This document shows, one piece after another, positions 23,030-64,000 of a stretch of DNA of 64,000 nucleotides (positions within the stretch are counted from its first letter, which is position 1; every line of letters starts with the position of its first letter). The stretch comes from Sminthopsis crassicaudata. Its lineage: Eukaryota. The notes below the pieces were generated by a model. The model made no database searches. It saw nothing but the letters and a program-made list of their open reading frames with translations, and was not told the DNA's origin. Made by a program: the position numbers and the translations under genes. The DNA is taken from positions 28,801,772 to 28,865,771 of the forward strand of contig NC_133620.1 of NCBI RefSeq assembly GCF_048593235.1, given 5' to 3'.

Positions 23030-23183
23030 GAAAATACGTCGTGTTGTTCTTCTACCCCTTGGACTTCACCTTCGTGTGCCCCACGGAGATTATTGCGTTC
23101 AGTGATCGGGCTGAAGAATTTAAGAAACTCAACTGCCAAGTGATCGGTGCTTCAGTGGACTCCCACTTCTGTCACCTTGCCTG
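23030..23183 (+). CDS. PRDX1: Peroxiredoxin-1 exon 3 with peroxidatic Cys52 ([14 protein letters not shown])
   Basis: Prx1-subfamily active-site motif, canonical splice sites, 154 nt. Confidence 0.99.
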
Positions 23184-31700: not shown

Positions 31701-33225
31701 CCCTTATTTTTCCTTGCTTATTTCTCCATTTAACGCCCAGATTCTATGCCCTTCTGGAGGAAATGTTTGGGCCATGTTGAGTCCCGTTTCATTCCTATTT
31801 CATACTCTCTTAGTCCTGTACTTGTTTCCTCTGGGTATTCCTTAGTGCTGCCATTCAAAGATCTCAGAAAATCAGGCTGGAAACCTGTAGTGTTCTGGTT
31901 GGTTTTCCGGAGGTCTCTGGACCAGCAGAGTAATCATCACAAGAATAGCCAGAGATAAAGTCCAATTCCTTATTGTCTCCTTCACAGCCGTCCCCTTGCC
32001 TGGGGCCTGGCCAGCTTTCTGGAGCCCTCCGGAATGGGTCTGGGTTTCTGTTGGGGAGGCGGGAGGAACCCCACAGTCTTGAAGTCTCCCTGAGTCCAGG
32101 AGCTTGGGCTCCAGCCTCCAGTCTCCTTCCCCAGTCTGTTCCAGTCCTATTCCATCCCCCTCTGGGTGGGATTGTGGCCTATTAAATACTCTATTACAAT
32201 TAAATCCATTCACCACACTGAGTATAAGCCAATCATATCACTGGGGAACCATTATTTGTCCTAAGATTAAATCAATCACACAGCTAGAGAACTAGTAATC
32301 ACTGTGCTAACCCAGAAACCATTGTCTCCTCGGTCCCACCGAGTTAGCACCTTGTAGGAGTCCTGGCCCGTCACACCAGTACCTGTAAGCTCTCTCTGCG
32401 CCCAAAGCTGCTCAGTTCGGGGTGACGTCGGATCACTGCCCCCTTTCCACGCTTCGGAGCCCAGCCGCCTGGGACTGCCCCCGTGGGAGCTGCAGGGGGG
32501 TGGGAGCTCCCTGGGAGGTCCTGCAGGTTCAGAGCGGGGCGGCCCTAGTCGGAGCTTCCCGCCCTTTGGTTCAGGTGCAGCTTCCGATGAGCTGCAGCCT
32601 CGGTGGTTATTTTCTCCTCTGCCTCAGCTCCGGGCCAGTGACTCTCTCAGCCTGCACGTACCCGGTGACCCTGCTCCCCGCCTTAAGCCACAAATCCGCC
32701 CCTCGGCTCCTGGTCCTGCCCCTCGTGCAGTCTCTGTGGAATCTGGGCCCCTTCCTGCCCGGGCGTCCAGGGGGCAGATCCCCCTCAGGTCAGTCCTGCT
32801 GCAGGTGCCCTCCTGGGGGGCCCCTGCCTCCTGTCGCCACAGCCTTGTGGCCTGTGCCAGCCTTCTGTAAATGGGCCTTGGATTCTGCCATCCGGGCACT
32901 GGCTGAGGACTCTCCCTCCCGCCTCTGCCCAGTCTCCGGCCCCGCGGTCAGGCCCCTGCTGGGAAGCCCCTGACCGGCTGGGCTCGGTGCCAGGAGCAGG
33001 CACCGGATTTGAGATTTACTGGCAGAGTCTGGGCGGCATCTTGGGGGCCTCAGGATTAATAAGAGTGCCCCAGCTCGCCCCCTCCCTCCCACCCGCCGTC
33101 CTGGGGCTTTCTGACAGTCAGAGAGCCAGGCTGGTGCCCAAAGGGCCCCACACCCCCCAGGGCCACCTCACAACCTTCCCTCCCCGCACGCCAAACACGT
33201 TTCCCCCTCGAGACACGTGCGGCGC

Positions 33226-33237
33226 CGCGCATGCGCA
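33226..33237. promoter_or_regulatory. NRF1 motif overlapping the MMACHC exon-1 splice donor; E-box CACGTG at 33214-33219
   Basis: CGCGCATGCGCA is a perfect YGCGCAYGCGCR match. Confidence 0.55.
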
Positions 33238-33238
33238 C

Positions 33239-33319
33239 CTGGAAGGGGTGCACCTCGAAGCCAAAGGGTTCCAGCGTAGCTCGGATGCGACCCTCCAGTT
33301 CAGCCGCTCCCGATTCCAT
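33239..33319 (-). CDS. MMACHC: MMACHC exon 1 (MESGAAELEGRIRATLEPFGFEVHPFQ); full CDS 825 nt = 274 aa
   Basis: 81 nt, PFGFEVxPFQ motif, donor CAG|GTGCGC. Confidence 0.97.
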
Positions 33320-33626
33320 GGTTCTGTGCTAGGCTCCCTGCGGCCCGCGCACTTCTAGGCGCAGCTCCCATCGGTTAGGAGGTGTAGTTCGTTGCGCAGG
33401 CGCGCTGGGCCAACGGCTTCGCAGCTCAGCTGCCCGGCCTTCCACGCTGCCACCGTCGACGGGTGGGGCGCGCGCAAGGCTTGCTGGGAGTCGTAGTTCG
33501 ATAGCCGTACGGAGCCCGTTGTGACCGCGAGAAGCGGATTCGGTGTTCCAGGGGGGCTCGAGGCAGCGCCGGCGCGCTGGGCTTGAACTGCGCAGCCTCG
33601 GGGAGGGAGGGGGAGGATTAGGGGCC
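33320..33626. promoter_or_regulatory. Bidirectional CpG-island promoter MMACHC/CCDC163 with ZNF143/THAP11-type motifs
   Basis: CTGGGAGTCGTAGTT at 33484-33498 (1 mismatch to CTGGGARWTGTAGTY) and TTAGGAGGTGTAGTT at 33375-33389. NRF1-like TGCGCAGGCGCG near 33393. Confidence 0.75.
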
Positions 33627-33701
33627 ATGGCTCCGGGGTCGGGGGGCCGGGCGCTGGCGGCGGCGCTGGCGGCGGGCCCGAAGCTTTGGAGCCCCCCCTA
33701 A
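33627..33701 (+). other. CCDC163: Strong-Kozak uORF (24 aa), in frame with the CCDC163 main frame
   Basis: GGGGCCATGG, reading MAPGSGGRALAAALAAGPKLWSPP, then TAA at 33699-33701. The same frame is then open to 34013. Confidence 0.55.
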
Positions 33702-33935: not shown

Positions 33936-34013
33936 GTGTCGGAGGAGTCCAACTGGGCTGAAAAGCTCGACTCCCTGCTGCAGGCTTCAGACGGCAATGT
34001 GGCCCGCATCAAG
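33936..34013 (+). CDS. CCDC163: CCDC163 first conserved coding segment (VSEESNWAEKLDSLLQASDGNVARIK)
   Basis: Ungapped 26-aa match to the recalled human N-terminus [26 protein letters not shown]. Donor AAG|GTGGGC. The true start is unresolved. Confidence 0.85.
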
Positions 34014-34537
34014 GTGGGCGGGGAGCGCTGCAGGCCCCAGGCTCGTACCCCGCGCCTCTCCTGCCGGTCCTGGGGCCCCGACACCCGGGCTTAAGCGAGC
34101 GCCCGCCCCGCCTCTGGGGCGGAGCTCTGGGGGAGACTCCTCCCCCAGGAGCCGCCTGGCCCCACCCCTCCATTAAGTTCTGACTTGAGCCCCGCCTCCT
34201 AGGGGGGGAAAGCTCTTCGCTGGATCACGGCCCCCAGGGTGGGCAGGAGCCTGATGGTGCCAACAGTCTTGGCCCAGCCCTCCCCCCCCCAGGTAGCGGG
34301 GGCCCCTTCCGTTGGCCTCGGTCCTGAGGGTCTCCTTTGCCCTTTTCTTGGGGGGGGAAGGGCCGCCTTGGAAGTTGGAGGGCTCGGAATGTGGGCTCGG
34401 CCCCTCCCCCATGGCTAGTTTGCTTCTCCTGGTCCCGGCCTGGCAGGGGGGGGGGGCGCTCGGAGCGCCCGGTCTTGCTCCGGGGCAGGATGGGCCGCGC
34501 TGACGTTTCCCTTGTCACTTTCCCTCCTGCTCTGCAG

Positions 34538-34577
34538 CAGCGGCTCTGCCCCCTTGGGGTCTCTTCACCTGGTGATT
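34538..34577 (+). CDS. CCDC163: CCDC163 coding exon 2 (QRLCPLGVSSPGD)
   Basis: Matches recalled QWLYPLGVST. NAGNAG acceptor and donor T|GTAAGT. Confidence 0.82.
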
Positions 34578-34790
34578 GTAAGTGTGTCATGCTCCGCCCC
34601 TTCACACGCCAGCCCAGTCCCGTCCCTCGGGCTCCTTTTCCACTCTGCCCCCGCTGCCCATGTCCTCCTGTCCTCTGCCCCCGAGGGAATGTGCCCACCC
34701 CTGCCTCCGAGGCCCCAGAAGCCCATCTTCCCCCGGGAAAGGCCCTGCTCCATGTGGTCCAGTCTTGGTTTCACCCCTTGCCTTCCGCAG

Positions 34791-34969
34791 CAAGCCTGGC
34801 TCCTTCAGGGTCCTGGGTGCCCCATTCTAATTCCCAAGGGGAACCACCTCGTCAGGTCTGGACCCTGGAGCCCACCCCGGAGGGGCAGGCCTGGGATGAC
34901 GCCTGCTTCTCCTTGTCGCTGTGGGATGAAATTGCCACTCTTCGGAACCAGCTCCGGACCCAGGCTCAG
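34791..34969 (+). CDS. CCDC163: CCDC163 coding exon 3 (...SLWDEIATLRNQLRTQAQ)
   Basis: Acceptor ccttgccttccgcAG, phase 1 to 0, heptad pattern at the 3' end, donor CAG|GTGCGC. Confidence 0.75.
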
Positions 34970-35057
34970 GTGCGCAGGGGAGTGTCTCAGCGGGATGGGG
35001 GCGGGGCCTCCTGCTCCTCTGGATCCGGGGAGACACTTTTCTTCCTGACCGGTCCAG

Positions 35058-35139
35058 GTGACGGTACTGATGAGTCAGGCTGTCCAGGGTCTGATGGAAG
35101 ACAGGGAGCGCCAGCGATGCCAGATTGATGAGCTAGAAG
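35058..35139 (+). CDS. CCDC163: CCDC163 coding exon 4 (VTVLMSQAVQGLMEDRERQRCQIDELE)
   Basis: Phase 0 to 1, coiled-coil character, canonical sites. Confidence 0.8.
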
Positions 35140-35274
35140 GTAACTCCTCGAGCACAGGGTCCTACGGTACGCATCCCTCCCTGAAGTCTGGGCCGGGCCC
35201 CCTAGGCTAGTCCCCTCACCGTGGGAGAGGGAAACGGGCTGGCGCGCAGGGATGACGTCCCCGTTACCATCCAG

Positions 35275-35434
35275 AGGAGCTGGGCCGGCTTCGAGGGGCC
35301 CCTGAAGGGCGAGCAAGGCTGGAACAACGAGTGGAAGACCTGAACTCAGAGCTACAGAGTCTCCGTCGACAGCTGCAGGCCCGTCCTGGGGAAGCTGGTG
35401 TGACAGCCCTCCTGCGCCAAGAGCTGCAGAATGA
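35275..35434 (+). CDS. CCDC163: CCDC163 coding exon 5 (ELGRLRG...LEQRVEDLNSELQSLRRQLQ...LLRQELQN)
   Basis: Phase 1 to 2, heptads, donor GA|GTGAGT. Confidence 0.8.
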
Positions 35435-35624
35435 GTGAGTGTTTACTGCTGGGACCCACCCCAGCAGCCTGCTGGGGCCCTCCAGGAAGCCCTCCCAGAC
35501 TTAGATGGGGTTTCCTTCCTGAGTGCTTGTCCTCTGCCCTTGAAGGGGGAGGAGTGGGACTGGCGGGGGGCTCTGCTTCTCACGGTTGGTCCGTCCTGCC
35601 TCACTGACCCCTCTGACCCTTCAG

Positions 35625-35692
35625 TCGCCAGCTGCTGTGGGAGGAGTATGAGGTTGTTCGAGGGGAGCTGAAGCTTCTGCGGGACCAGCTAG
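35625..35692 (+). CDS. CCDC163: CCDC163 coding exon 6 (RQLLWEEYEVVRGELKLLRDQL)
   Basis: Matches recalled human LWEESEIMQKELKLLQYQL. Phase 2 to 1. Confidence 0.9.
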
Positions 35693-36453
35693 GTGAGTGG
35701 GGGTCCCTCCCCTGAGCTTCTCTGTGGCCCATTTGAAAGCCTGTTTTCTTCATAAGAGAGTGTGGGGAGGTCGGAGCCAGCCCAGCTCCAATCCTGGCTC
35801 AGCCACTTAGTTGCCAGTGTGACCGAGGGCAAACTGAGTGTCCTCATCTGCAAAATGGGGCCATTGGGTGAGATGAACTCTTTAGTGAAGTGCTTCCCCT
35901 TCCAGAGAGACGGGAGCAGGGGCATTTCTATTGTTCATCCTTTCACCAAGCATTTACTAAGTGTGCGTCCCTAATGGGGGCACGGCTCTGTGACAGGGAC
36001 TAGCTAGAGACACTGGGGTAAGATCAGGACCTGCCCTTCAGCTGCTGAGGCCTACTAGGGCATCTAAGGACACAGGCATCCATCAGTGTAGCAGTGAGGT
36101 GCCCACGAGGGAGGAAAATAAACTGGAAGGAATTCTTTCAGGTGCACAGGGGACAGGGAGGGCATTCCAGTCCTTGGGAACAGCCTAAGCAAAGGCCTGG
36201 AGGCTGGAGAGCACAATCTGGATTCAAGGTAGAAAGTTACCTGTGCAGAGGAAAGGAGCCACATAAGATTAAGAGGGCTTCACTTAGGGGCTTTGGACTT
36301 TCCTGAGGAAGCAATAGAGAATTCTGAAAGTACTGAAATGGTTGGCCAGACTGAGGGCTGGTGAGAGAGGGTAAACCTCATCACTTTTGGGATCTTCTGG
36401 GGCTCAGTTCTTAAACTGAGTAAATGTTCCTCCTGAGCGAAAGACCAAGTATT

Positions 36454-37081
36454 GAAGGGAGGGAGGAGGGAAGGAAAGAAGGAAAAAGGAGAAAAGGAAG
36501 GAGAGGAGAGAGAAGGAAGAGAAAGGAAGAAAGAAGGGAAAAGAAAAGGAAAGAGGAGAAAAGGAGAGGAGGAGGGAAGAGGAGAGAGGAAAAGAGAAAG
36601 TTAGGAAGGGAAAAGGAGAGGGGAAATAAAGGAGAAAAGGAGAGGAGGGAAGAGACATAGAAAAGGAGAAAGAAGAGAAAAGAGAAAGGAAAGAAAAGAG
36701 GGGAGGAAAGCANNNNNNNNNNNNNNNNNNNNNNNNNNNNNNNNNNNNNNNNNNNNNNNNNNNNNNNNNNNNNNNNNNNNNNNNNNNNNNNNNNNNNNNN
36801 NNNNNNNNNNNNNNNNNNNNNNNNNNNNNNNNNNNNNNNNNNNNNNNNNNNNNNNNNNAAAGAGAAGGAAAGGAGAAAAGGAAGAGGAGGAAAGAAAAAA
36901 GGGAGCAAAGGAGAAAGGTAAGAAAAAAGAAAGGAAAGAGAAGGAAAGAGGAGAAAAGGAAGAGGGAAGAGACAAAGAAGGGAGAAAAGGAGAAGAGAAA
37001 AGGAGAGAAAGGAAAGAGGGGGGGAAGAGGAAAGGGGAAAGAGGACAGAAGGGAAGAGGTTGAAGAGGGAGAAGGAAGGAA
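36454..37081. repeat. Polypurine (GA-rich) low-complexity tract spanning a 146-N assembly gap (36713-36858)
   Basis: Near-pure A/G on the + strand, inside CCDC163 intron 6. Confidence 0.92.
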
Positions 37082-37147
37082 GCTGCTGTTCCTTTCCCGT
37101 TGCCCCTCACTGCCACGGACCAGGTTGCTGACCCTCCCCTCCCACAG

Positions 37148-37215
37148 GCCAACAGCAAGAGTTGTTACTGAGACAGATGGCTGAAGCCCGGCAGGCTCAG
37201 GGGCGCAGTTGGAAG
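37148..37215 (+). CDS. CCDC163: CCDC163 coding exon 7 (QQQELLLRQMAEARQAQGRSWK)
   Basis: Matches recalled human [23 protein letters not shown]. Phase 1 to 0, donor AAG|GTAAGG. Confidence 0.9.
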
Positions 37216-37537
37216 GTAAGGGTCCTGAGCTTCCTGCTCCTGAAGGACAAGTCATCTTGGAAAGGCATCTTGAGATGGGGCCCTTGATTGCACTTGGGCC
37301 CAGCTCAGATGCTTTTCTACTCTGCTGATAGAAGGGTGGGTGCCCTGGAGAAATGGTCTGCTCCCCCCACCCCAGCAGCCCCTTAGGGCTCCCTCCCACC
37401 ATCCCCTAAGTTCCCCCACCCTATCCCCTGGATCCCAGCTTGTTTAGAGCACTGGGGGGGGGGGGGGAAGAGGGAGAAGGGCCTGAGGGAAGGGCATGTT
37501 CTGGGCTCATTACCACCCGCAGCCTGTGCCTGGGCAG

Positions 37538-37638
37538 GTGCTGGAGCAGGTCCAGAGTGATCAGGAAGGCCACAGCCGCGTGGTGGACGCTGCCAGGGTG
37601 GAGGCCAGAGACATTCGGCAGGAGATCAATCTTCTCAG
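37538..37638 (+). CDS. CCDC163: CCDC163 coding exon 8 (VLEQVQSDQEGHSRVVDAARVEARDIRQEINLL)
   Basis: Phase 0 to 2, open and helical. The donor AG|GTCTGG is weak. Confidence 0.7.
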
Positions 37639-38206
37639 GTCTGGGGCCAGGCTGGGGCTGGGAGGTAATGGGCCCCCCACCCCCGCCTCCACCCAGGGGA
37701 CACAGTGCTCCTGGGCAGGGGCTCAGGGAGGAAGCAGACGGAGCTGGCTTTGGGAGGTGACTGGACTTTTCCTTTTGTTGAGCCCAGAGCCTGGGTTCCC
37801 TCTGCTCCTGCAGGGGCCCAGCCCATACAAAATACCAAGGAGGACAGGAGTCATCCTGTAGGACAGAGCTGTGAGGGGCTCCATGGCTGGAGGGCCTGGA
37901 TCCTAAGCCCAGTCCTGCTGCTGGCCACAAATATAGCAGCTCCTGAGCCTAGAACTGGGAGGAGACAGCTGGCCCATCTCTAGGCCTGCCCCTCTGGGAG
38001 GGGAGCTTTCACCTGTGAGAGAGGGGACCTGCCTGGGCTCCTGCAGCTGGAAGGCCTTTGGGCCAGGCTCTGAAGCCATGTCTCCTTGTCCCCTGTCCAG
38101 AGCATAGTGAAGAGACCCGAGTTCAAATTTTGTGTGTGACTGACCCTTAACCTCCATGTGCCTCAGGCTCCTCTTTTGTAAATTGGGAATAATAATAACA
38201 TATTAA

Positions 38207-38352
38207 GAGCAGCTAGGTGGTGTAGTGGACAGAGCACCAGCCCTGAAGTCAGGAGGACCCAAGTTCAAATTAGGCCTCCGACACTTAATACTTCCTGGCT
38301 GTGTGAACCTGGGCAAGTCACTTAGCCCCAATTGCCTCAGGAAAAAAAAAAG
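38207..38352 (+). mobile_element. WSINE1-type CORE-SINE in CCDC163 intron 8
   Basis: Head, CORE and A-tail. ATAACATA is repeated on both flanks (38195-38202, 38353-38360). Confidence 0.87.
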
Positions 38353-38970
38353 ATAACATAATAATAAACTCAGATATTTATAAAGCTCTTTTCAAACCTT
38401 AATGTGTCAGGTTAATCTAGCAATTACTGCTATTAATGGTAATTATGAATATGTTCTTTTCCTTGTCTTTCTCCCCCCTTTCCCTCCAGGGGCTTCACTG
38501 CCTGGTGGAGCACTTGCCTAGGGGCAAGAAGAGCTGAGCTTGTCCTTTTAGGTGACCAAGAGCAGGCTGCTTCACCTTGGGAGCAGCTTATAAAACCCAG
38601 TCAGTCAGTTAACACTGAGTGCCTTCCTGGGCCCCCTGTGGGGAAGCAATGCCTTTGAGTGAGCCCCTTCACATCAGTCAGATGACCTCAAGGTAGAAAG
38701 GTTCCCATCCCAGGATGCCCACTGTGCTAGGGGCAAAAGCTAGCAGTTGCCTCTTCCTTATGCAAGGGCTCCTACTCAAAGCTGGAATAATTAATTCTAC
38801 ATCTCCACCCCCATAGTTTCTGGGACTCTCACTTCCCACTTTGGAGAAACTGAGTCAGTCCCAGTGTTAGGGAAGGTGGGGACCGGCTCCCATAAGGCTG
38901 TGATGGTATCAGCCTATGACCCCTTCCCCGGGACTCTGTTGCCTGACTCTGAGGGCCGGGCCCCCCACAG

Positions 38971-39101
38971 GGCCATGGTGTGTTCTCTGCAGGCCCAGTT
39001 TCGAGGAGAACCCCCTCCCCGTCCAGACTCTGCCATTTCTAGCTCTGACTTAAGCCTCCTAGACAGTGACAGCAGCTGGGACATACCTTCTCGGGATCCT
39101 G
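38971..39101 (+). CDS. CCDC163: CCDC163 coding exon 9 (AMVCSLQAQFRGEPPPRPDSAISSSDLSLLDSDSSWDIPSRDP)
   Basis: Phase 2 to 1 fits both neighbours. Donor CTG|GTGAGT. Confidence 0.65.
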
Positions 39102-39319
39102 GTGAGTGAGCTGGCCAGCCTAGAAGTGCAGGGTCCCCTCCCAGCCTGCCTCCTCCACCCAGCACACTTGTATCTCCCTGCCGCTTGGACCTTGGAAGTG
39201 ACCCTCTTTTGCTTTCAGACAGGCTGGGCTCAGATCAGCTTTTGGTCTCCTCTGCTCTTAAGGACCCCAGCCACAAGTCCCTTTCTTTCCTCTACACCCC
39301 TTCCCCCCCATCCCTGTAG

Positions 39320-39549
39320 CTATCCCTGGGGACTTTAAAATGGCTCAGAGTACGGGGTCCCTGAAAGTCCCTTCTCTGACTGCTGGCCTGGGCCTGCCCC
39401 CCTCAGCCATGCCAGCAGAACCTCACAGCAACACTGAGTCCAGCACCGAGTCCGGCCCAGAGACCAGCGCTGCCCGGCCTCCTGTGAAGAGCCCCCAGAC
39501 ATCTGACCGGTTGAACAAAGCACCAAAGCTGCTCCTTGGTGACCTCTGA
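39320..39549 (+). CDS. CCDC163: CCDC163 terminal coding exon 10 (IPGDFKMAQSTG...KLLLGDL*)
   Basis: Long polypyrimidine acceptor, phase 1, stop TGA at 39547-39549, AATAAA downstream. Confidence 0.6.
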
Positions 39550-39774
39550 ATGGGCCAGCCAACTCTCCATGCCCTGGCTTGCTGAAGGACAACAGAAATC
39601 CTCTGGGCATCGGGGAGGGAAAGCAGAGAGAAGCAGCTCATCCCCAGGAGCCTTCCCTCCCCCCAGAAGATTTCTTTTGCTGGCCCCAAATCGCTGCACT
39701 CTGCTCCCTGGTTCCCCTCTTTCTCTTCTCATCTCCTCTAAGATTTCTTCCTTTTCCCTATACTTCAAATCTGA

Positions 39775-39780
39775 AATAAA
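39775..39780 (+). terminator. CCDC163: CCDC163 polyadenylation signal AATAAA
   Basis: Canonical hexamer about 225 nt after the predicted stop. Confidence 0.65.
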
Positions 39781-46499: not shown

Positions 46500-46880
46500 G
46501 GAAATCGTATTCCCCGCGCTGCTTCGCCAATTGGCCTTGGGAAACATCAATCAGTAAATTTCCTGAAGGTGATTGGTCTACCTGTGTGTTTATACCCGCC
46601 CCCAGAAAGTTCGGCGGGACCTGGATTTTGGAGTTCCTCAGTCACTTCTTACCCCTCCTCTTCTGTTTACGCCTCGACTTTTTTCTTATTGGTCCGGGAG
46701 TCTGTCGGAATCGGCATTTCCAGATACTCATTGGCTCTGAAGCCTCCTTGTTCTGCCCTCCGAACCACGTGGGCTCACGGACCAATGCGGAGTCCGGGTT
46801 CCGAGAGGGCAATCGTGGGTTGGCTAGTCCGGGGGAGGGGAGCGAGGGGGGGGGGGAGGCGGCGCCGAGGCCCCGCCCCC
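46500..46880 (+). promoter_or_regulatory. TESK2: CpG-island promoter (TESK2 by synteny) with five CCAAT boxes and an E-box
   Basis: CCAAT/ATTGG at 46527-46534, 46572, 46688, 46730 and 46782; CACGTG at 46766-46771. CpG island ~46100-47700. Confidence 0.65.
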
Positions 46881-47157
46881 GTCCTCTCAGCCCGGTGGCC
46901 GGCGGGGAGAGCGCCTCAGTAGTTCGCGGCTGCTGAGCCCCGAGGACGCGGCCCCAAGAGGGGCAGCGGCCTGGCTCCGGTCCGGGGGACAAGAACAGCG
47001 ACGGGGACAGGGACATGGCTGCCGCCTCTCGGCACGCAGTGCCCCCAGTGCCCGTGCCAAGGACCCGGACTGCCGCCACCGCCGCGGCCGGGGGCTGAGG
47101 ACTATGAGCCCTTCGCCCGAGCAGTCAGGCCTCGCTCCAGCCCCGCTGCAGCCTCAG
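46880..47157 (+). other. TESK2: Probable TESK2 non-coding exon 1 (start approximate); intron 1 runs beyond the window end
   Basis: GC-rich leader ending at strong donor CAG|GTGAGC. Identity is inferred only from the conserved PRDX1-MMACHC-CCDC163-TESK2 order. Confidence 0.55.
47015..47098 (+). other. uORF (27 aa, MAAASRHAVPP...AAAGG*) in the putative TESK2 leader
   Basis: GACATGG is a strong Kozak context. TGA at 47096-47098 lies before the donor. Confidence 0.5.
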
Positions 47158-50100
47158 GTGAGCGGCCCAGAGTCTCCCGCCCCTCCTCTCCTCAAGCTCC
47201 TCCCTCAGGTCCCGCCCCCTCGACCTCCCAGCCTCAGAGCCTGCGGGGGAGGGGGGGTCTTCTGGCTCGGGCTCCGCCTCCTCTCTTACCCCCTTCCCCG
47301 CTCCGCCCCCGGGTTCTTCACCCAGGTGGAGGAGGGAGTCTCTCTGCCTCTCCTCTAGGGCCTGTCCTCTCTCCCGCAAGACCGCCCCCGCGGGCGTGCG
47401 TGCGTGTACGAGACCACGCCCCCTCCATCACGCCCCGCCCTCAGGCTCTTCTAAAGGGGGTGTCTTTCGACCTCCCCTAGAAGCTCCTTCCCTCCCCTTG
47501 CTCCTCCTCTCTCCGGCAGTGCCTCTTGCCGGATCCCTCTCTTTGCAGCCCTGAATCCTAAAGAGGGGCTCCCCTAACCTGCAGAAAACGGCCCTTCCTC
47601 CCAGGACGCTTCCTTTCGTCTCAGCCTTCCCTGGTCGCACCCCCCCTTTTCTCACTCTCCATAAGAGCCCCCCCAGTGTCTCACCTCCCAGGCCTTCCCA
47701 CTCCCTCCCCTTGAGCTTCCCCTCCCCTCTGACCCTCCACATTGCAGCGCAGGAGTCTCCCCCTCCCCCAGTTCTTACCTTTTCTCTGTTCTTCTTTCTT
47801 GGTAAGGTTTCCCCTCCCCCATAACCTCACCGGTGCTGCAATTTCCTTTAGTCCTGCATCTCCTTAGTTCTCGGGAACTTCCCCCCATTGCCACGTATTT
47901 TCTCCCTTCTCCCCAACTCCTTCATTTCATTCCAGGGTATTCCCTCTCTAGCTCCCAGGGGCTCTACTTCCCTTGAGATATCTGGAGGTCCCTGGGCTTT
48001 CCTGGGCAGGGGAAGGGATTCCATGCCTGTTCTCTGGCTTACCCATCTCTTTGTTGTCCTTTAGGTCTCTCTTGTGATTCCCCATTCTCAGGATGTTGCC
48101 CATTAGGAAGCCAAGGAGTTTCCCCCCAACCCTCCCAGACGTTCTCATCCCTCTATTTCCGTGATTCTGAGATCCCCTGCCTTTTCTCTGGAGAGTTTGC
48201 CTTCTGGACTGCATCTCCTTCCTATTTTAGCTTGGGGAATTCCTCTCTCTCCCTCCCTTAGGCCTGCTTTCCATAGAGATTTATATGGTTTAACATAACC
48301 TTTTGGGGGGGGGGGTCTTGTGTCATTGAACTCTTGTAGCTATTGTATAAAAGGGACTGCTGTTCCTGGGGCATATGGAGATACAAAGTAGGCCAGGTTC
48401 TTGATCTCAAAGAGATGATGAGGGCAGGGGAGATGAAATGCACACAGATAATCTAGCATAGAGGATGTGGGGGCAATGGCAGGCACTGGCAGGGCCTCGA
48501 TAAAGGGCACTTGGAAGGGCAGAGGGAGCTAGCACCTGAACTGGACCTAGTGAAGGGGACAGTGGCCTTCAGGGAGGAAGCAAAGGGGAGAGAGAGAAGG
48601 AAGTCTCTATTTGAGGTTGGCTGCGGTTGATTGCAGAGGAGACTGGGACAGACACCTTCTGAGGACTGCTGCTTCCCAAAGCAGTGTGGGCTGCAGTCAC
48701 AATGGGTTGGCTCTTTCCTGATTCCTACAGCCCTTGCTGCGTAGCCGGAGCTGGCCCAGGGGCCTGGGCATCTCAGCTGCTGTCTTTTTCTCACTTTGCT
48801 GCTTGCCAGAATACCCCCCTCTATTGGAGGAAGGTGATGGAAGATCCCTATTGAGATTCTGGGTTCAGTGTTGTGTAGAAAGAAAAGTCTTATTTCTAAA
48901 TGTATTTGCATTGTCTTAGAACTGGTTTCACACAAATACAGAAGAACTTCTCTGCTTTCCTGTGGGAAAGTGTTTGTGTTACGTGCCATTCGGTGACTGT
49001 TACATTGGATTATAATCCAAGATAAGAGCTTCCGTGGGGAATCTGCCATTTAGGTAGTGCTGGGTACAAGGAGGAGCTTATTGGGTGTTTGTGAAATTCA
49101 GGGGGGCTGTGGCCGGGACTGCAGAGCGTGACAAGTTTGGTGTTATCTACCTTATGTCCTCCCTGTGCATGTCTTCCCAATTTGTAGAAGTGTCACTACA
49201 ACTAGGAGGGACAGAAGCTGCCAACTGGAGGTATATGAGTGGAATCTAATTGCTAATCCTCACCAGGGAAAGAACAACATCTTTGAATAGGTTGGAGAAG
49301 GGAAGCAGGACAAAGATAGCCCTCAGGATTAGCCTTAGCATAAGTTGCACAGGACCAGCAAAAAATTTTCAAGGTTTTTGATAGAAGATGTCTGTCAAAG
49401 AGGAGTTTAGGTGTTCTCAGGCGACTGCAGTTAAGCAGTTGGGAAACCTCCCTTGCAAGAATGGTTCTGAGAGGCCATGACGTGCAATAGAGAGGGTGCT
49501 AGACGAGTACTTAGACTCAGGTGCCTTGTTTCCTACAATGTATGGGTGCCACTGGGCAGTTCCCTTAATCTCTGAACTGCAATTCCCTTGTGTGTAATAT
49601 GAAACTCAGTGACCTGTGCCCTGTGTGCCATACGGTGCTCTGGAATGAATTGCGTGACCATATAAGTATGTGGAAAGCCATAAAAAGTTATGTAAAATGT
49701 TATTAGGTTGGCTAGGTTGCTCAGTGGATAGAACCAAGTCCTGAAGTCAGGAAGAATTTCTACGTTCAAATAAGGCCTCAGATACTTTTTAGTTGTGGGA
49801 TCCTGGGCAAGTCACTTACCCCTGTTTGCCTCAGTTTCCTCATCTGTAAAATGATCTAGATAAAGAGGCAAATCACTCATAGATCTTTGCCAAACAAATC
49901 CCAAATGGGGTCATGGAGAGTCAGATACAGAAGTGTTGTTTTGTTAGGCCTTCTTTTCAATTCCTAGAATGAATTCTAGTCATCTTTTTCTTCCAAAGCT
50001 AACAAAACTACTAATTCCAGAATATCCTGGAAGAACTTTCTGTGATAGGAAAAATTTAAAAAAAAATTTTTTTTTAAAGAAAGACTTGTGCATTTCATTT

Positions 50101-51256
50101 AGTGTGCTTCTATTTTAAAATGCTTGGTAACTGAGTGTATAGGTTTATAAAGTAGTTGATAACATGGCCACCAGTGAGGCCTTGACCTCGACTTCATGGC
50201 TAATTTTTGCTCTGGATATAGAATCTTTCAAAGGCAGGAATTTTAGGAACTTGAAGTTCATACTGCTGTTCTTGTGGATGTCTAACAGAACAACGTGCCT
50301 TACTTATCCTTCATCTCTAGCAAGCTCTTTAACCTTTGATTGTAAAAGTGACACTTTCTTTTTTCTGAAAAAAGGAGAGATATCTTGCACACATGGATGT
50401 GTAGTATATGGATGCAGTACATGTTGGATATAGTTTTGCCCCATTTTGTGGGGCCTAGTAGGAAGTTTAAGCTTTGGCAGACTTTCTCAGAGAAATTTTA
50501 TGAATCTCTATGGCTTTAATCTGATTTCCTGGGCACAGAGAAAATAAAAAAAATCCACTGACCTTCAAGCTGCCTAGGGGAAAAAAAAACAAACCAGTGG
50601 CAGAGTGAAATTGCTTTGTTAATCTTTTGGTGAACTGGAAAAATGACAAATCAGCAGAATGAGCACTTAGGAATAAATCTCTTCCTCATTTCATATTCTA
50701 GTAAACATTTCTTAGATTCCTCACTGTCAGCATTATATACCATTATATGTTTCTCCAGGAATGTACAGCATGTTACAATGTATGCTGAATCATTTTTAAC
50801 ACCTTAAGACAGATATCAATTTGAGGAATTTTATGACTCAAAGCTGTGCAAACCCCATTAAAAAAAATTCTGGTCTTATTTATTTAATTTGTTACATTTG
50901 AATGTTGAATAGACTTCACTGTTTTCAGCTCCTATCTTATTCCCAGGTTATCTGTCCCCTTGCTTCAGATCTCCCCCAGTCACTTGTTTCTCACTTCTTT
51001 CTCAATGGCCTGAGCTTTGGGCATTTTGTTTGTTGATGATACATATGGTTAAATAGATTTTAATGAAGTGACTATCTAATTGAATCATTCAATTTCTCTT
51101 AGATTATAGTCTGTTATAGCCTAGAAGCATCATTTTTTATTTTAGTGGAATTCTTTTTTCTTTTCCTATGTAGCCAGAAACCCAATGGTAAAGTATTACA
51201 TCAAAGTAAATTTGAGATTTTTGTAAAAAAAAAAAAAAAAAAAAGAAAGTGTGTGT

Positions 51257-51393
51257 GGGGGGGCGCAGTGGATAGAACACCAGCTTTGAATTCAGGAGGA
51301 CTCAAATCTGGACTCAGACACTTAACACTTCCTAGCTGTGTGATCCTGGGCAAGTCACTTAACCCCAGCCTCAGAAAAAGGAAAAAAAAAAAA
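51257..51393 (+). mobile_element. WSINE1-type CORE-SINE
   Basis: Head, CORE and A-tail. AGATTTTTGT at 51215-51224 and 51394-51403 flanks it together with extra 5' sequence. Confidence 0.85.
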
Positions 51394-53045
51394 AGATTTT
51401 TGTGCCTTGGACATAAACAACATAATAAAATAGCATTAATCTAGCACTTTAAGGTTTGCAAAGTGCTTTCCAGATATGCCATTTTTATCCTCTAGAAAGC
51501 AAGTGCTCTTTTTATCTTACACATTAGGAAACCGAGGCAGACAGTTTATCTATTAAATCAAAAATTATTTGACCTTGGTTATACATCTAGCAAATGTCTG
51601 GGCATGGATTTAAATTCACATATTCCTGACCAAGTGTTCTATCCATTGCTTCACCTTAATTACCTCATTTTTATATGCTAATTTGAACTTTAAAATAATT
51701 TTTAGTATGCTAATAATTAGTACTTTCTTAGTACTGATTTCATATTATCTGATCTCTAAGATTAGAAGTTTAGTGTTTTCTTTATTCCTTTCTTCTTTTA
51801 ATTATTACCTATTTATCCCATATACATTTGATTTGTATATATATTTGTTTTCCTGATATCTTCTCTTTAAGATTGTAAGCTCTTTGAGGGCAGGGACTAT
51901 CTTTTACAAACCCTTTGTAAATCCAGCACCTAGCATGATGTCTAGCACATAGCAGTCATTTAATATCTACTTATTGGTTGGTTGATTCTTCTTTATTCTT
52001 AAATTTTCATTGTATCTTGCTACTGATTTTTTATATGATCACTAAGATAAATTCTTTCCATTTATTCTTAGCCAAATCCCTGATTGACTGTCTAGAATTT
52101 TCCCCAATTTCCTCTTCCACTCCCCCTTTTTTTTTTTTTTTTGTCTAGATCAAAATTTCTTAAACTTTTTCCACATGTTGTATCCCTTTTTTGCCTGAGA
52201 AATTATGTGACCCCAAATATATGGGTACATAAAATTTAGGTATGCAAATCAAACATTTACTGATAATCATAAAGAAATTTATTTTAAAACAATTATTTGC
52301 TTATATATAATTTTACCATTTATGAAAAAGCAAATTTGCATATTAAAGAGATGAATGTGCTTGTTTATTTTTACATAAAGAATCTTGGGAGAATAGTTGA
52401 TACCTTTTTGCAACTTTTACATTTATATAGGGTTTTAACATAAAGTTTAGGAAACTTTGGCTTAGATCTGCATGTGATTTAATCAAACTAGAGAATGTTG
52501 TGACTTATTCATGGTCATATAGCTATTATATGTCAGAAGCATATAACCTATATCAAATTGCTTGTCCTTTTGGCGAGGGAAAAGGGGAGGAAGGAAGAGA
52601 ATTTGTAATTCAAATATAAAAATAAATGTAAAAAATTGTCTTTATATGTAATTGAAAAAAAATTATTTTAATATTATTTATCGAAGCAGAATTTGAATCC
52701 AGTTCTTCCTAAATCCAAAGGCAGCTCTCTGTTTACATTAGCAGATTGGCCTCCTAGTTATTCTATACTTAAATTAATTAGCAAACATAGTTTTTTCAGG
52801 AAGAAACTTACAGTCTCTGTAGAGAAACAAAATTTGTTGATCCCATTAGAATGGGGTAGACTGCAGTTTATTCCTGTTTTCTCATTCGGTGCCACTCTTG
52901 TCCATGTTCTTCCATTAGTCCTTTACCGTGAGCTGTCCAAAGCTCTCAAGATTTCTCACATGCAGGGAAGGATGCTTTACTTTGGGTCATTTTGGCCAAT
53001 TAGTCTGGAGGAACTGAGGCGCCTCTTCTCACAATTATGACTTTA

Positions 53046-53464
53046 TTTTTTTTTTAATTTTTTTTTCCCAGACAATTGTGGTCAAAAGTTTATTTTAACA
53101 TAAAACTCTAGGTACAAAAACATTTATTAGTTGATTTTTTGAGAGTATTTTGATGTTCGTATTTCTCATATGAACATCTGTTATTTGTCAATTCATGAAA
53201 TATGAACATCATGCTGATGTATAATTCTGGCCATAAGGTCATGACTATTCCTTAAGTTTAATTTTTTAATGTCTGAACTGATATATTCCACAATTTTCTT
53301 CAATTCTTGGTATGATCTAAACTGATCACCAAGTTAGAATTCTTTATGGATAATTCTGTAATTTCTAATGCCAATGGCTTGGTCTTGAAACACTATGATC
53401 ACATTTTTTAAATTGTTCAAACTTTCTTAATTGACATATTGTTGGTTCAGTTAATATAGCTACA
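53046..53464 (-). mobile_element. Unidentified poly(A)-tailed retroposed insert nested in a hAT-type MITE
   Basis: Poly-T at 53046-53066 and minus-strand AATAAA at 53089-53094. TSD ATGACTTT(A) at 53037-53045 and 53465-53473. The host ends in the TIR-like GGTTACGAACACCTG near 53582. Confidence 0.65.
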
Positions 53465-54860
53465 ATGACTTTAAATGCATAAAGTAAAACACATGGGATT
53501 TCAAAGGAACTCAAGTATATTGGAATACAGTAATCAAAATTTAAAAAACCCCAATTCACAGACCTCTGGTTACGAACACCTGCTCTAGGATTTTTTTTTT
53601 TTCCCCAATCATTTAACACTTTTTATGACTAGTATGCTTCCTTTTTCAGTTCCATATTTTTTGAGTATTCTCTTTTTTGTGAAGAAAGGCAGGAATCTAG
53701 AGAGAACTGGCCTCTTAGGTTAAAATTCCGCCTCAGACACTGGTTGTGATCTTGAGCAAGGTTTCTGATTCCTCCATGCTCCTGAGACTTTGAAGACCAT
53801 AAATTGCAGAGCAGGTACTGATGTGCCTTGATAGAAGGTACTTCCTCATTCAAGAAACTCCCTTCTGAAATTTCAATGCAGACAAAAAGGAAAAAAAAAA
53901 AATTATATATATATATATATTATGCTACTTGAGTTCAGCAATTGTGGATGATGTGCTTACAATCTATGTAAATCAACCATGTATCTATCTGTCCATTGGA
54001 TCACTCACAATTTTTATTGTTGAGTAGAAATTGTTTCATGAAGCATAATTGTATTATCATCACTGGTATTAAAAAGATGGATCTTTGTATCAGGAGCAGC
54101 TTGGGATATTGACTTTCAATATGACTTTCTCAAATTTGATTTCGACCATTCTTCTGTCTAATTCTGGGCCCAACTCATTGTCTGCTTGTCCAGGGTAGGA
54201 TAGGATGATCAACTAACTCAGTGGAATAGAGCTTTTTTATCCATCTGGTTTTTTCTTTGTGGATTTTTTTGGAAATTCTTAGTGTTCAAGGATCTCATTA
54301 GGAGGTTCTGTAGAATTCTTAGTTTTTATACAATCATTGTCATTGACAGACAAACTTTTGGAAAACCTTTTTACTTTTTGGGAATCCTTCTTCTGTCTGA
54401 GATATGCCTAGGACATCATCCAGAATGGTAGTATGGCTTATTGCCTGAAACTTCACCTAGCACTGACAATTTGGGGGGGAGGGGGGAGAGGGGAGAGGGG
54501 TGATTTAGCAAAATTATCTCAGGTGCATCTGTAAAGGAATCATAGGATCATGACACAAGGTTTGGAATAGACCTCAGTGGCTGTCTGAATTAGTCTCTTT
54601 ATTTGATAGATAAGAAAATTGAGGCCCAAGAAAATTCTGAGGTAGGATTTGAATCCAGGGTCTCTGACTTGAGTGCCGAACCTCTTCCTGGTAAATTGAA
54701 TTGCTTTGTATTCTTTGTGGGAGCTTTTTCATAAAGATCTTAAGAGAATGAGGGGAGAGTACATATGTAGGTTTGATAGGATTCTTTCAAGGTGCTAAGT
54801 CACTGGAGTGGATGTAATTATCTAATGGTTCAGTATGATTGATCTGATTCTACAAGGAGA

Positions 54861-55401
54861 TGTTATGGGCCAGAACTTGAAACAAGGTCCTGAGTGGAAT
54901 TGAGGAGACAATGATTAAATCTAATTTAGTATTGATTTAATCCTACAACAAATAATAGTTTCCTAGTGATGAAATGATTGGTGTGTACTCAATGGACAAC
55001 ATATAAGCAGGAAGCTCTCAGAGTTCTAGAGGACTTTGGGACATTCACAACTAGGATTGACTTCCGGGAGATTCACAAGGCAAAAACCCACAATCCCACA
55101 CTCTTGGAGGCAGAGTCAGATTCATTCCCACTTCCCACTTTGTGCTGGCTGGAGACATTGGGAAGACGAGAAGCTGGAAGAGACAAAGGACTAGAGGCAA
55201 GATCCAGAAGGACTCTGAAAACTAGCTGAGTCCCAAGTGAAGGAGATAAGATTTTGGAAACAGACAGAAAGGATCTAGACTAACTCCAGGCTGCATTTTG
55301 GGATTGTTGAATTGAACTGAAAGGAAGGCTGCCTCCAGAAGCTCCCGAAGAAACCTGCACACAGAGAACGATCACAATTTAGAGAACAAAAGAACATTAC
55401 A
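54861..55401 (+). mobile_element. ERV1-like solo LTR (541 bp)
   Basis: TGTTATG...CATTACA termini (6/7 inverted match), 4-bp flanks GAGA/TAGA, ATATAAG near 55001. Confidence 0.65.
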
Positions 55402-58253: not shown

Positions 58254-58288
<35 letters not shown>

Positions 58289-58330
58289 AAAAAATGAAAA
58301 AATGAAAACAAAGCTTAGAGAGATGCAAGA

Positions 58331-58479
58331 TTTTTCTTTTTTTCTCCCCTGAGGCAATTGGGGATAAGTGCCTTGCCCAGGTCACACAACTAGGAAGTAT
58401 TAAGTGTCTGAGGCCAAATTTAAACTCAAGTCCTCCTGACTTAAGGGCTGGTACTCTATCTACTCTGCCATCTGTCTTT
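58331..58479 (-). mobile_element. WSINE1-type CORE-SINE
   Basis: Reverse SINE with T-tail. TSD AGATGCAAGA at 58321-58330 and 58480-58489. Confidence 0.85.
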
Positions 58480-58539
58480 AGATGCAAGACTCTTGACTCA
58501 GTAAGAAGACAGAAGATTCAATTTTATGCTGATAGTAAT

Positions 58540-63599: not shown

Positions 63600-64000
63600 A
63601 AAAAATGAGATGGGGGAAAAAAAAAACTCAAGCAAACAAACACCACCATAAAAAAAGGTGAAAATATTATGTTTTGATCTACATTCAGTCTCCATAGTTC
63701 TTTCTCTGGATGTAGATTATACTTTCCAAACCAAGTCTATTGGAATTGCCTTAAATCACCTCATTGTTGAAAAGAGCAAGTCTATCACAGTTGATCATCA
63801 TATAATCTTAATTGTGGTATATAATGTTCTCCCAGTTCTGCCCAGCTCACTCAGCATTAATTAGTTCATGTAAATCTTTCCAGGCTCTTCTGAAATCAGC
63901 CAGCCCATCATTTCTTATATATTCATAACTTATTCAGCCATTCCCCAACTGAGGGGCATCCACTCAGTCTCCAGTTTTTTGCCACTACAAAAAGAGCTAT
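63600..64000 (-). mobile_element. LINE-1 3'-end fragment (same family also at ~612-870, 17765-18060, 24060-24400, 41510-41600, 44930-45050)
   Basis: Shares blocks with 9818-10280 (aaatactatg/ttgtgatccaca, gttgatcatca, ctgctcatttcactcagcat). Confidence 0.7.

What the first reader, a model, noticed from the sequence alone, without database searches (positions are those of the whole stretch)
34915..39101. The reconstructed CCDC163 looks like a paralog of CCDC159
Blocks line up in order with human CCDC159 as I recall it. WDEIATLRNQLRTQAQVTVLMSQAVQGLMEDRERQRCQIDELEEEL resembles CELESLKSQLQAQTKAFEFLNHSVTMLEKESCLQQIKIQQLEEVL. LLRQELQNDRQLLWEEYEVVRGEL resembles LLAQEIRDSKKFLWEELELVREEV. The acidic LDSDSSWD resembles SWDSDSD. 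CCDC159 lies on human 19p13, like PRDX2, in the known 1p/19p paralogon, so the two may be whole-genome-duplication ohnologs. CCDC159 has been linked to spermatid head-tail assembly, which would give CCDC163 a testable function next to testis-enriched TESK2.
Basis: inference. Interest (0 to 1): 0.7.

Follow-up and report, generated by a model that had tools for sequence, protein, structure and literature searches.

The report
CCDC163 is a true CCDC159 paralog
The coiled-coil gene next to MMACHC in this marsupial window is CCDC163, and it shares ancestry with the sperm-neck gene CCDC159, shown by sequence profiles and identical intron positions; annotation pipelines already hint at the link, and its age and meaning for function remain untested.

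Summary
Observation confirmed. Positions 34915-39101 hold seven GT-AG exons of CCDC163, 97-100% identical exon by exon to Tasmanian devil CCDC163. One correction: the last of these exons starts at 38971, not 38993.

The N gap (36713-36858) lies in a purine-rich repeat inside the intron between exons d and e. Phases fit across it. Orthologous proteins run straight through the junction, and shark, teleost and CCDC159 genes have the same intron with no extra exon.

Paralogy with CCDC159 is real:
- A marsupial CCDC163 profile searched against 1.84 billion proteins gave only 53 hits. All were CCDC163 or CCDC159 (E 8e-8 to 4e-6 for CCDC159).
- Profile-profile comparison gave 98.5-99.5% probability. 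Reversed and shuffled controls collapsed.
- Six consecutive introns share alignment column and phase (0,1,2,1,0,2) in both families.

CCDC163 orthologs sit head-to-head with MMACHC from shark to mammals. Several are misnamed "CCDC159-like".

The duplication predates the amphibian-amniote split. A whole-genome-duplication origin is plausible but unproven: no fish CCDC159 was seen and the tree cannot date the event.

A sperm head-tail role for CCDC163 is inference only. The scan noted this gene before on this same stretch (s1-173095, s1-173121). I rate the relationship as already known at database level, not in papers.

The parts
33936..34013 (+). CCDC163 exon 1 (78 nt, ends phase 0). It encodes the conserved N-terminal motif (W..KLDSLL.A.DGNVARIK) that CCDC163 orthologs share from shark to mammals and CCDC159 lacks. 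It lies outside the finding's range.
   Evidence: The start-codon question belongs to another finding (s1-173121).
34538..34577 (+). CCDC163 exon 2 (40 nt, phase 0 to 1). It is the counterpart of the 34-nt phase 0-to-1 exon of shark and teleost CCDC163 and of turtle and anteater CCDC159.
   Evidence: 13/13 identical to devil P0001.
34791..34969 (+). CCDC163 exon 3 (179 nt, ends phase 0). Its last ~17 codons (from 34915, LWDEIATLRNQLRTQAQ) begin the region homologous to CCDC159.
   Evidence: 59/59 identical to devil; hhalign starts here; intron at alignment column 399, phase 0, in all five genes.
35058..35139 (+). Exon b, 82 nt, phase 0 to 1. The length is exactly 82 nt in shark and teleost CCDC163 and in anteater and turtle CCDC159.
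35275..35434 (+). Exon c, 160 nt, phase 1 to 2 (193 nt in shark CCDC163, 196 nt in both CCDC159 genes; the differences are whole codons).
35625..35692 (+). Exon d, 68 nt, phase 2 to 1. It holds the RQLLWEE motif (SKKFLWEE in CCDC159). It is 68 nt in shark CCDC163 and both CCDC159 genes.
35693..37147 (+). Intron d-e (phase 1). It holds a purine-rich simple repeat (about 36451-37050) with the assembly gap 36713-36858 inside. No exon is hidden there.
   Evidence: junction continuous in P0001 and P0002; homologous intron without an inner exon in four other genes.
37148..37215 (+). Exon e, 68 nt, phase 1 to 0 (77 nt in shark and teleost CCDC163 and both CCDC159 genes).
37538..37638 (+). Exon f, 101 nt, phase 0 to 2 (101 nt in shark and teleost CCDC163; 107 and 122 nt in CCDC159). 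An alternative acceptor 15 nt upstream (37523) gives the extra five residues (LVPGQ in the devil protein) of devil isoform X1.
38971..39101 (+). Exon g, 131 nt, phase 2 to 1. It holds the end of the helical core (AMVCSLQAQ) followed by the acidic Ser/Asp-rich segment. It spans the position of a phase-1 intron that shark and teleost CCDC163 and both CCDC159 genes have.
   Evidence: A start at 38971, not 38993, is required by phase and by P0001.
39407..39549 (+). Conserved last exon (143 nt with stop, phase 1 to 0), ending ...LLLGDL*. It matches the 143-nt (teleost) and 140-nt (shark) last exons that end ...SDL. It lies outside the finding's range.
33230..33322 (-). MMACHC exon 1, head-to-head with CCDC163. 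This is the synteny anchor that identifies CCDC163 orthologs in shark, teleost and caecilian.

Best explanation
The gene at 33936-39549 (+) is the marsupial ortholog of CCDC163. Its central helical region of about 195 residues, encoded from 34915 to about 39010, is homologous to the central region of CCDC159. The two genes are paralogs that descend from one ancestral gene with the same exon-intron layout.

CCDC163 is the copy that has stayed head-to-head with MMACHC from sharks to mammals. CCDC159 is the copy that sits beside TMEM205. The duplication is older than the amphibian-amniote split and is most likely (about 55-60%) one of the early vertebrate genome duplications.

Mechanistically, CCDC163 is a soluble protein. 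It has a long, segmented alpha-helical (coiled-coil) core, disordered ends, a private N-terminal 22-residue motif, and an acidic Ser/Asp-rich tail ending in ...SDL. By analogy with CCDC159, it probably acts as a dimerising scaffold or adaptor at the centrosome or spermatid neck. That last step is inference only.
For: Shown here:
1. Identity of the gene. Window exons are 97-100% identical to devil CCDC163. PRDX1 and MMACHC lie upstream.
2. Exhaustive search. hmmsearch of a marsupial CCDC163 profile against 1.84e9 proteins gave only 53 hits at E<=1e-3, and every one is CCDC163-type or CCDC159. CCDC159 of gundi scored 7.8e-8, turtle 3.7e-7 and axolotl 3.9e-6. No other coiled-coil family appeared.
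3. Profile-profile comparison. Mammal CCDC163 vs CCDC159: 98.5%, E 2.9e-15, 194 columns. Non-mammal CCDC163 vs CCDC159: 99.5%, E 2.1e-22.
4. Controls. A reversed target scores 18-29 against 115-169 for the real one. Shuffles of 7-column blocks reach at most 34.7. Pfam coiled-coil background is 13-20 bits, all below threshold.
5. Gene structure. Six consecutive introns fall in the same alignment column and phase in window/devil, shark and teleost CCDC163 (one teleost intron lands two columns off) and in anteater and turtle CCDC159. Shark CCDC163 and turtle CCDC159 exon lengths are 34/34, 82/82, 193/196, 68/68, 77/77, 101/107, 80/80.
6. Orthology by synteny. CCDC163-type genes of shark, teleost and caecilian abut MMACHC head-to-head. 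CCDC159 of anteater and turtle abuts a DUF4149 gene, which I take to be TMEM205.
7. Tree. The CCDC159 and CCDC163 clades each get 100/100 support.
8. Structure. The AlphaFold model has helices 63-120, 123-149 and 154-262 at pLDDT 85-95, with disordered ends. There is no transmembrane-like stretch in the conserved isoform.
9. The ESM Atlas places the CCDC159 cluster at 0.96 next to CCDC163.

From papers: CCDC159 knockout mice have defective spermatid head-tail assembly (Ge et al. 2024, as cited in PMC11423811 and PMC12901780).
Against: Core identity between the families is only 24-29%.

No CCDC159-type protein from fish or shark was recovered. The tree places the CCDC159 branch at the base of fast-evolving mammalian CCDC163, not at the species root, which is likely long-branch attraction. 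The date of the duplication is therefore open.

No RNA evidence was obtained for this genome. The joined window protein itself was not searched; the devil ortholog served as proxy.

Function: CCDC163 is uncharacterised. The one statement on expression found here names thyroid, brain and testis (PMC9020039), which is not testis-specific.
Confidence: 0.93

Rival explanations
1. The two genes are real paralogs, but they arose by a later, small-scale duplication in the sarcopterygian or tetrapod stem, not by an early vertebrate whole-genome duplication. Under this view CCDC159 is a relocated, fast-diverged copy of CCDC163.
For: All fish and shark family members found are CCDC163-type; the two tested for gene order, plus a caecilian, are MMACHC-linked. 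CCDC159-type proteins were seen only in axolotl, turtle and mammals. In the unrooted tree all fish CCDC163 lie on one side of a branch (92/97) and tetrapod CCDC163 plus CCDC159 on the other.
Against: The search profile was built from marsupial CCDC163 only, and just 53 cluster representatives were returned, so a divergent fish CCDC159 could be missed. The AU test does not reject CCDC159 joining at the species root of the CCDC163 tree (p 0.257). From outside knowledge, human CCDC163 (1p34.1, by PRDX1/MAST2) and CCDC159 (19p13.2, near PRDX2/MAST1, RAB3D, LDLR, DOCK6) lie in blocks with many accepted ohnolog pairs.
Confidence: 0.4
2. The resemblance is generic coiled-coil composition (heptads rich in L, E, Q, K, R), not common descent.
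For: Both proteins are mostly helical and Q/E/L-rich. Pairwise identity is about 25%. Pfam shows many weak coiled-coil matches for these proteins.
Against: Among 1.84e9 proteins nothing but the two families passes E 1e-3. Reversed and block-shuffled profiles lose the signal. Six introns coincide in column and phase, and several exon lengths are identical.
Confidence: 0.02
3. CCDC163 has diverged in function from CCDC159. It would be a broadly expressed adaptor driven by the CpG-island promoter it shares with MMACHC, acting through its private N-terminal motif and ...SDL tail, with no special role in the sperm neck.
For: The N-terminal motif and C-terminal tail are conserved from shark to mammals in CCDC163 and absent from CCDC159. 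The head-to-head arrangement with MMACHC is conserved. A paper names thyroid, brain and testis as main expression sites in human.
Against: Testis is among the reported sites. Mammalian CCDC163 evolves fast (devil vs shark 26% in the core), as many reproductive genes do. The paralog's only known role is in spermatids.
Confidence: 0.45

Closest known systems
CCDC159 (coiled-coil domain containing 159; human 19p13.2)
   Same: A homologous helical core of about 200 residues, with shared motifs (QL..Q.., L..V..LE.E, Q..I..LEE, SKK.LWEE.E..R.E, ..K.L, E...I.S.V..L). Six identical intron positions and phases. A 34-nt phase 0-to-1 exon upstream. An acidic Ser/Asp-rich segment downstream.
   Different: CCDC159 lacks the CCDC163 N-terminal motif and the ...SDL end. 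It has its own Cys/Pro/Ser-rich N-terminus and a ...SWDSDSD...SFPPA end. It lies beside TMEM205/RAB3D/PLPPR2 rather than MMACHC/PRDX1. It was seen here only in tetrapods. It has a known knockout phenotype; CCDC163 has none.
CCDC163 of other vertebrates (NCBI 'transmembrane protein CCDC163'; many non-mammal orthologs named 'CCDC159-like', 'myosin-4', 'NST1' and so on)
   Same: The window gene is the ortholog: 97-100% identical per exon to the devil protein, the same ten-exon layout as in shark and teleost, and the same head-to-head MMACHC neighbour.
   Different: Marsupial exon g spans a phase-1 intron position present in fish CCDC163 and in CCDC159. Exons c and e are shorter by whole codons. 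The conserved isoform has no hydrophobic segment, so the name 'transmembrane' fits at most an alternative 3' exon.
KASH5 (CCDC155); NCBI names Petaurus CCDC163 'KASH5-like'
   Same: A meiosis/testis-linked coiled-coil protein of similar size.
   Different: No KASH5 or KASH_CCD match appeared in the exhaustive search or in Pfam. There is no transmembrane-plus-KASH tail in the conserved isoform. I take the name to be an annotation artefact.

Membership tests
CCDC159/CCDC163 family (from my memory PANTHER PTHR34533 / InterPro 'CCDC159/163'; no Pfam model exists) | Statistically significant, collinear sequence similarity over the central coiled-coil region | tested here: met
   hmmsearch E 7.8e-8 to 3.9e-6 against 1.84e9 proteins. 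hhalign 98.5-99.5%, E 2.9e-15 and 2.1e-22. Controls collapse.
CCDC159/CCDC163 family | No closer unrelated family (reciprocal exclusivity) | tested here: met
   All 53 hits are CCDC163-type or CCDC159. The search starting from CCDC159 was capped at its 120 best rows, all eutherian CCDC159, so the reverse direction is only partly seen.
CCDC159/CCDC163 family | Shared exon-intron structure (positions and phases) | tested here: met
   Introns at alignment columns 399, 426, 508, 548, 574 and 632 with phases 0,1,2,1,0,2 in the five genes (one teleost intron two columns off). Exon lengths of 82, 68 and 77 nt recur.
CCDC163 orthogroup | Head-to-head neighbour of MMACHC, with PRDX1 beyond it | tested here: met
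   Window: MMACHC exon 1 at 33230-33322 (-), PRDX motifs at 23062 and 26509 (+). Same MMACHC arrangement in shark, teleost and caecilian.
CCDC163 orthogroup | N-terminal W..[QK]L..[IL]L.A.D.N.A.IK motif and a C-terminal ...[SG]DL end | tested here: met
   Exon 1 (33936-34013) and last exon (39407-39549).
Ohnolog pair (2R whole-genome duplication) | Duplication dated to the vertebrate stem, with both copies predating the gnathostome radiation | tested here: inconclusive
   CCDC163 is present in shark. CCDC159 was seen only in tetrapods. The tree's join point is unresolved, and the AU test for the species-root placement gives p 0.257.
Ohnolog pair (2R whole-genome duplication) | Both genes embedded in paralogous chromosome blocks with several other ohnolog pairs | not testable with these tools
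   Only short flanks were seen: PRDX1-MMACHC here, and Ras (RAB3D)/DUF4149 (TMEM205)/PAP2 (PLPPR2) around CCDC159. The 1p/19p pairs (PRDX1/2, MAST2/1, RAB3B/D and others) are my outside knowledge.
KASH5-like | KASH_CCD coiled-coil domain and a C-terminal transmembrane segment plus KASH peptide | tested here: not met
   No Pfam KASH_CCD match. No KASH5 among the search hits. Maximum 19-residue hydropathy is 0.5-1.1 in the conserved isoforms.

The most novel reading that the evidence does not exclude
CCDC163 and CCDC159 are 2R ohnologs that still work in the same machinery, the spermatid centrosome / head-tail coupling apparatus. They might act as partly redundant or heterodimerising coiled-coil scaffolds. 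If so, loss or silencing of CCDC163 would affect sperm neck integrity or male fertility. One route to such silencing is the promoter epimutation it shares with MMACHC in epi-cblC.
Probability: 0.15. Interest if true: 0.55.

Novelty: already known. Interest (0 to 1): 0.3.

Why it matters
CCDC163 is an uncharacterised gene whose promoter is silenced together with MMACHC in the human disorder epi-cblC. Firm evidence that it is the sister of CCDC159, a gene needed for spermatid head-tail assembly in mice, gives it a concrete first hypothesis to test: localisation, knockout, and double knockout with Ccdc159.

The work also fixes an annotation problem. MMACHC-linked CCDC163 orthologs of sharks, fishes, amphibians and reptiles are currently labelled 'CCDC159-like', 'myosin-4', 'NST1', 'SYCP1-like', 'golgin' or 'uncharacterized'. 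The 'transmembrane' label does not fit the conserved isoform.

The relationship itself is not a surprise to databases, so the gain is consolidation rather than discovery.

Tried and rejected
- **Pfam.** Scans of each exon and of full-length family members gave nothing above threshold, only generic coiled-coil noise.
- **Word-index searches.** An open frame of the window with the exon as scored region found only devil and Dromiciops. Devil CCDC163 as query found only marsupials. So the exhaustive profile search was justified.
- **Search from CCDC159.** It returned 171 hits, but only the best 120 (all eutherian CCDC159) were listed. Marsupial and non-mammal CCDC159 ids were not obtained.
- **Relic of the CCDC163 N-terminal motif in CCDC159 loci.** The best match (L001:10624-10659) ends in stop codons after 13 residues, so I treat it as chance.
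- **'KASH5-like' name of Petaurus CCDC163.** No support.
- **TESK2.** No coding exon recognised in 46500-64000 by motif scan, so adjacency was not verified.
- **Dating the duplication by tree.** The join point is unresolved and probably pulled by long branches.
- **Loci that could not be read.** The axolotl CCDC159 gene spans about 958 kb, the caecilian DNA file is too large, and the Rhineura protein is not on record.
- **Turtle CCDC159.** It could be mapped exon by exon only to residue 288, because no canonical splice path was found beyond that point.
- **Papers.** None states the paralogy. The PANTHER and InterPro accessions I recalled occur in no held paper.


Full report
**What is in the window**

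The sequence looks marsupial: a marsupial-type SINE lies in the f-g intron, and all close protein matches are marsupial.

Reading 34700-39300 and translating candidate exons gives GT-AG exons on the + strand:
- x3: 34791-34969
- b: 35058-35139
- c: 35275-35434
- d: 35625-35692
- e: 37148-37215
- f: 37538-37638
- g: 38971-39101

The end phases run 0,1,2,1,0,2,1. Upstream lie exon 1 (33936-34013) and a 40-nt exon (34538-34577). Downstream lies a 143-nt last exon (39407-39549, ending LLLGDL-stop).

A word search used an open frame of the window as query and scored the exon part only. It found 'transmembrane protein CCDC163' of Sarcophilus (P0001) and Dromiciops (P0002). Exon by exon the window is 100% identical to P0001 for x2 to e, 31/33 for f and 42/43 for g. 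The gene is therefore CCDC163 of a devil-like dasyurid.

With a start at 38993 the phase from exon f does not fit. The acceptor at 38970 does fit, and it gives the AMVCSLQAQ sequence seen in all marsupial proteins.

MMACHC exon 1 lies head-to-head at 33230-33322 on the minus strand. Peroxiredoxin motifs lie at 23062 and 26509 on the + strand. No TESK2 coding exon was recognised.

**The assembly gap**

The only N run is 36713-36858. It sits in a tract that is at least 92% purine, from about 36451 to 37050, inside the intron between exons d and e.

- Exon d ends in phase 1, and the only open frame of exon e is the one that accepts phase 1.
- The devil and Dromiciops proteins read through the junction without extra residues.
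- The homologous phase-1 intron exists, with no exon inside it, in shark and teleost CCDC163 and in anteater and turtle CCDC159.

So the gap does not affect the coding model. I could not add RNA evidence. Nothing from those places was sent to a search tool afterwards.

**Is the similarity to CCDC159 real?**

Pfam has no model for either protein.

I aligned nine marsupial CCDC163 proteins (A1) and ran the profile against 1.84 billion cluster representatives. Only 53 proteins reached E 1e-3. BLAST against reference members, plus source names, shows that all of them belong to three groups:
- mammalian CCDC163;
- CCDC163-type proteins of shark, sturgeon, teleosts, lungfish, coelacanth, amphibians and squamates;
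- CCDC159 (gundi E 7.8e-8, hawksbill turtle 3.7e-7, axolotl 3.9e-6).

No other coiled-coil family appears.

Profile-profile comparison gives the following:

| Comparison | Probability | E-value | Columns |
|---|---|---|---|
| Mammalian CCDC163 vs CCDC159 | 98.5% | 2.9e-15 | 194 |
| Non-mammal CCDC163 vs CCDC159 | 99.5% | 2.1e-22 | 209 |
| Non-mammal vs mammal CCDC163 | 99.95% | 1.4e-38 | 260 |

The recalled human strings occur verbatim in Marmota CCDC159.

Controls: reversing the target drops the score from 115-169 to 18-29. Shuffling 7-column blocks gives at most 34.7. Larger blocks recover part of the score, as expected if the real blocks are homologous and collinear.

The third block (the acidic Ser/Asp run) lies outside the significant alignment and is low-complexity. 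It sits in a comparable phase-1-flanked exon but adds little on its own.

**Intron test**

I fetched gene loci for anteater CCDC159 (L001), turtle CCDC159 (L002), shark CCDC163 (L003) and teleost CCDC163 (L004). I derived exact exon maps by matching each protein to its DNA.

On a 27-sequence alignment, six consecutive introns fall in the same column with the same phase in these genes and in the window gene: columns 399/0, 426/1, 508/2, 548/1, 574/0 and 632/2. One teleost intron lands two columns away, which I take to be an alignment effect.

Exon lengths (nt), in order:

| Gene | | | | | | | |
|---|---|---|---|---|---|---|---|
| Shark CCDC163 | 34 | 82 | 193 | 68 | 77 | 101 | 80 |
| Turtle CCDC159 | 34 | 82 | 196 | 68 | 77 | 107 | 80 |
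| Window CCDC163 | 40 | 82 | 160 | 68 | 68 | 101 | 131 |

Chance cannot give this pattern.

**Orthology and misnaming**

The shark, teleost and caecilian CCDC163-type genes lie head-to-head with MMACHC, exactly as in the window. Anteater and turtle CCDC159 lie beside a DUF4149 gene, which I take to be TMEM205. In the anteater a Ras-family gene (RAB3D) and a PAP2 gene (PLPPR2) are also adjacent.

The MMACHC-linked genes are therefore CCDC163 orthologs. NCBI nevertheless calls several of them 'CCDC159' or 'CCDC159-like', and others 'myosin-4', 'NST1', 'SYCP1-like' or 'golgin'.

These orthologs share with mammalian CCDC163 an N-terminal motif and a ...SDL end, both of which CCDC159 lacks.

**Timing**

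A maximum-likelihood tree of 35 proteins separates a CCDC159 clade and a CCDC163 clade, each with 100/100 support. Amphibians and amniotes have both genes, so the duplication predates their split.

Where CCDC159 joins the CCDC163 subtree is not resolved. It attaches next to the long mammalian CCDC163 branch. The placement expected for a pre-gnathostome duplication is not rejected (AU p 0.257).

No fish or shark CCDC159 was seen, but the search profile was marsupial CCDC163 only. The 1p34/19p13 paralogon argument (PRDX1/PRDX2, MAST2/MAST1, RAB3B/RAB3D and others) comes from my outside knowledge and was not tested here. I put a whole-genome-duplication origin at roughly 55-60%.

**How it likely works**

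An AlphaFold model of the devil protein, built with the family alignment, shows three long helices (63-120, 123-149, 154-262) at pLDDT 85-95 and disordered ends. The helical part coincides with the region homologous to CCDC159.

The conserved isoform has no hydrophobic segment. Only the alternative open frame at 39543-39776 has one, so the name 'transmembrane' fits at most a minor isoform.

CCDC159 is reported to be needed for spermatid head-tail assembly in mice and to localise to the spermatid neck (Ge et al. 2024, as cited in PMC11423811 and PMC12901780). CCDC163 is uncharacterised, and a paper gives its main human expression as thyroid, brain and testis (PMC9020039).

My reading is that CCDC163 is a coiled-coil scaffold or adaptor. 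A role at the centrosome or sperm neck is a reasonable first hypothesis, but it is inference only, at about 25-30%.

**Novelty**

No held paper states the paralogy. However, automated annotation already reflects it through the 'CCDC159-like' names, and the ESM Atlas puts the two clusters side by side (0.96). From memory, PANTHER and InterPro file them together, which I could not check here.

I therefore rate the relationship as already known at database level.

**Rule-bound omission**

The joined (spliced) window protein was not built or searched. The exons were searched by reference, and the devil ortholog served as the full-length proxy.

Noticed in passing
L003, L004 and the caecilian place; proteins P0025, P0026, P0052, P0024, P0028, P0054, P0038: MMACHC-linked CCDC163 orthologs of shark and caecilian, and CCDC163-type proteins of a newt and other non-mammals, carry wrong or empty names in NCBI/UniProt: 'CCDC159', 'CCDC159-like', 'myosin-4', 'NST1', 'synaptonemal complex protein 1-like', 'golgin A6-like', 'uncharacterized'. 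Petaurus CCDC163 is called 'KASH5-like'.
   Followed up: yes
window 39407-39549 versus 39543-39776: The last exon conserved across vertebrates (143 nt, ending LLLGDL-stop; 143 nt in teleost and 140 nt in shark) ends at 39549. The sister finding's 378-codon model runs to 39780, where a different open frame encodes a hydrophobic stretch (19-residue hydropathy 1.86). Conserved isoforms have no such stretch, so 'transmembrane protein CCDC163' fits at most an alternative 3' exon.
   Followed up: partly
window 38971-39101: Marsupial exon g spans the position of a phase-1 intron that shark and teleost CCDC163 and both CCDC159 genes have (80-nt exon followed by a further exon). This suggests intron loss or exon fusion in the marsupial or mammalian CCDC163 line.
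   Followed up: partly
window 37523-37538: Two acceptors lie 15 nt apart at exon f. The upstream one gives the five extra residues (LVPGQ in the devil protein) of devil isoform X1. Other marsupial models use the downstream one.
   Followed up: partly
window about 36451-37050: A purine-rich (at least 92% A+G) simple repeat of about 600 nt flanks the assembly gap on both sides. This is probably why the assembly broke there. Part of it (36503-36549) tripped the reads tool's filter.
   Followed up: partly
window 33200-33650: A CpG-rich bidirectional promoter region lies between MMACHC exon 1 (minus strand) and CCDC163 exon 1 (plus strand). The head-to-head pairing is conserved in shark, teleost and caecilian.
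   Followed up: partly
window about 38205-38350: A marsupial-type SINE (tRNA-like head, ends in poly-A) lies in the f-g intron. Similar copies occur elsewhere in the window.
   Followed up: no
window 46900-47500: A second CpG-rich island lies downstream of CCDC163, possibly the TESK2 promoter or 5' exon. No TESK2 coding motif was found in the window.
   Followed up: partly
proteins P0001 vs P0052: Mammalian CCDC163 evolves fast. Devil vs shark CCDC163 are only 26% identical in the core, no closer than either is to CCDC159. This explains why similarity-based naming confuses the two.
   Followed up: partly
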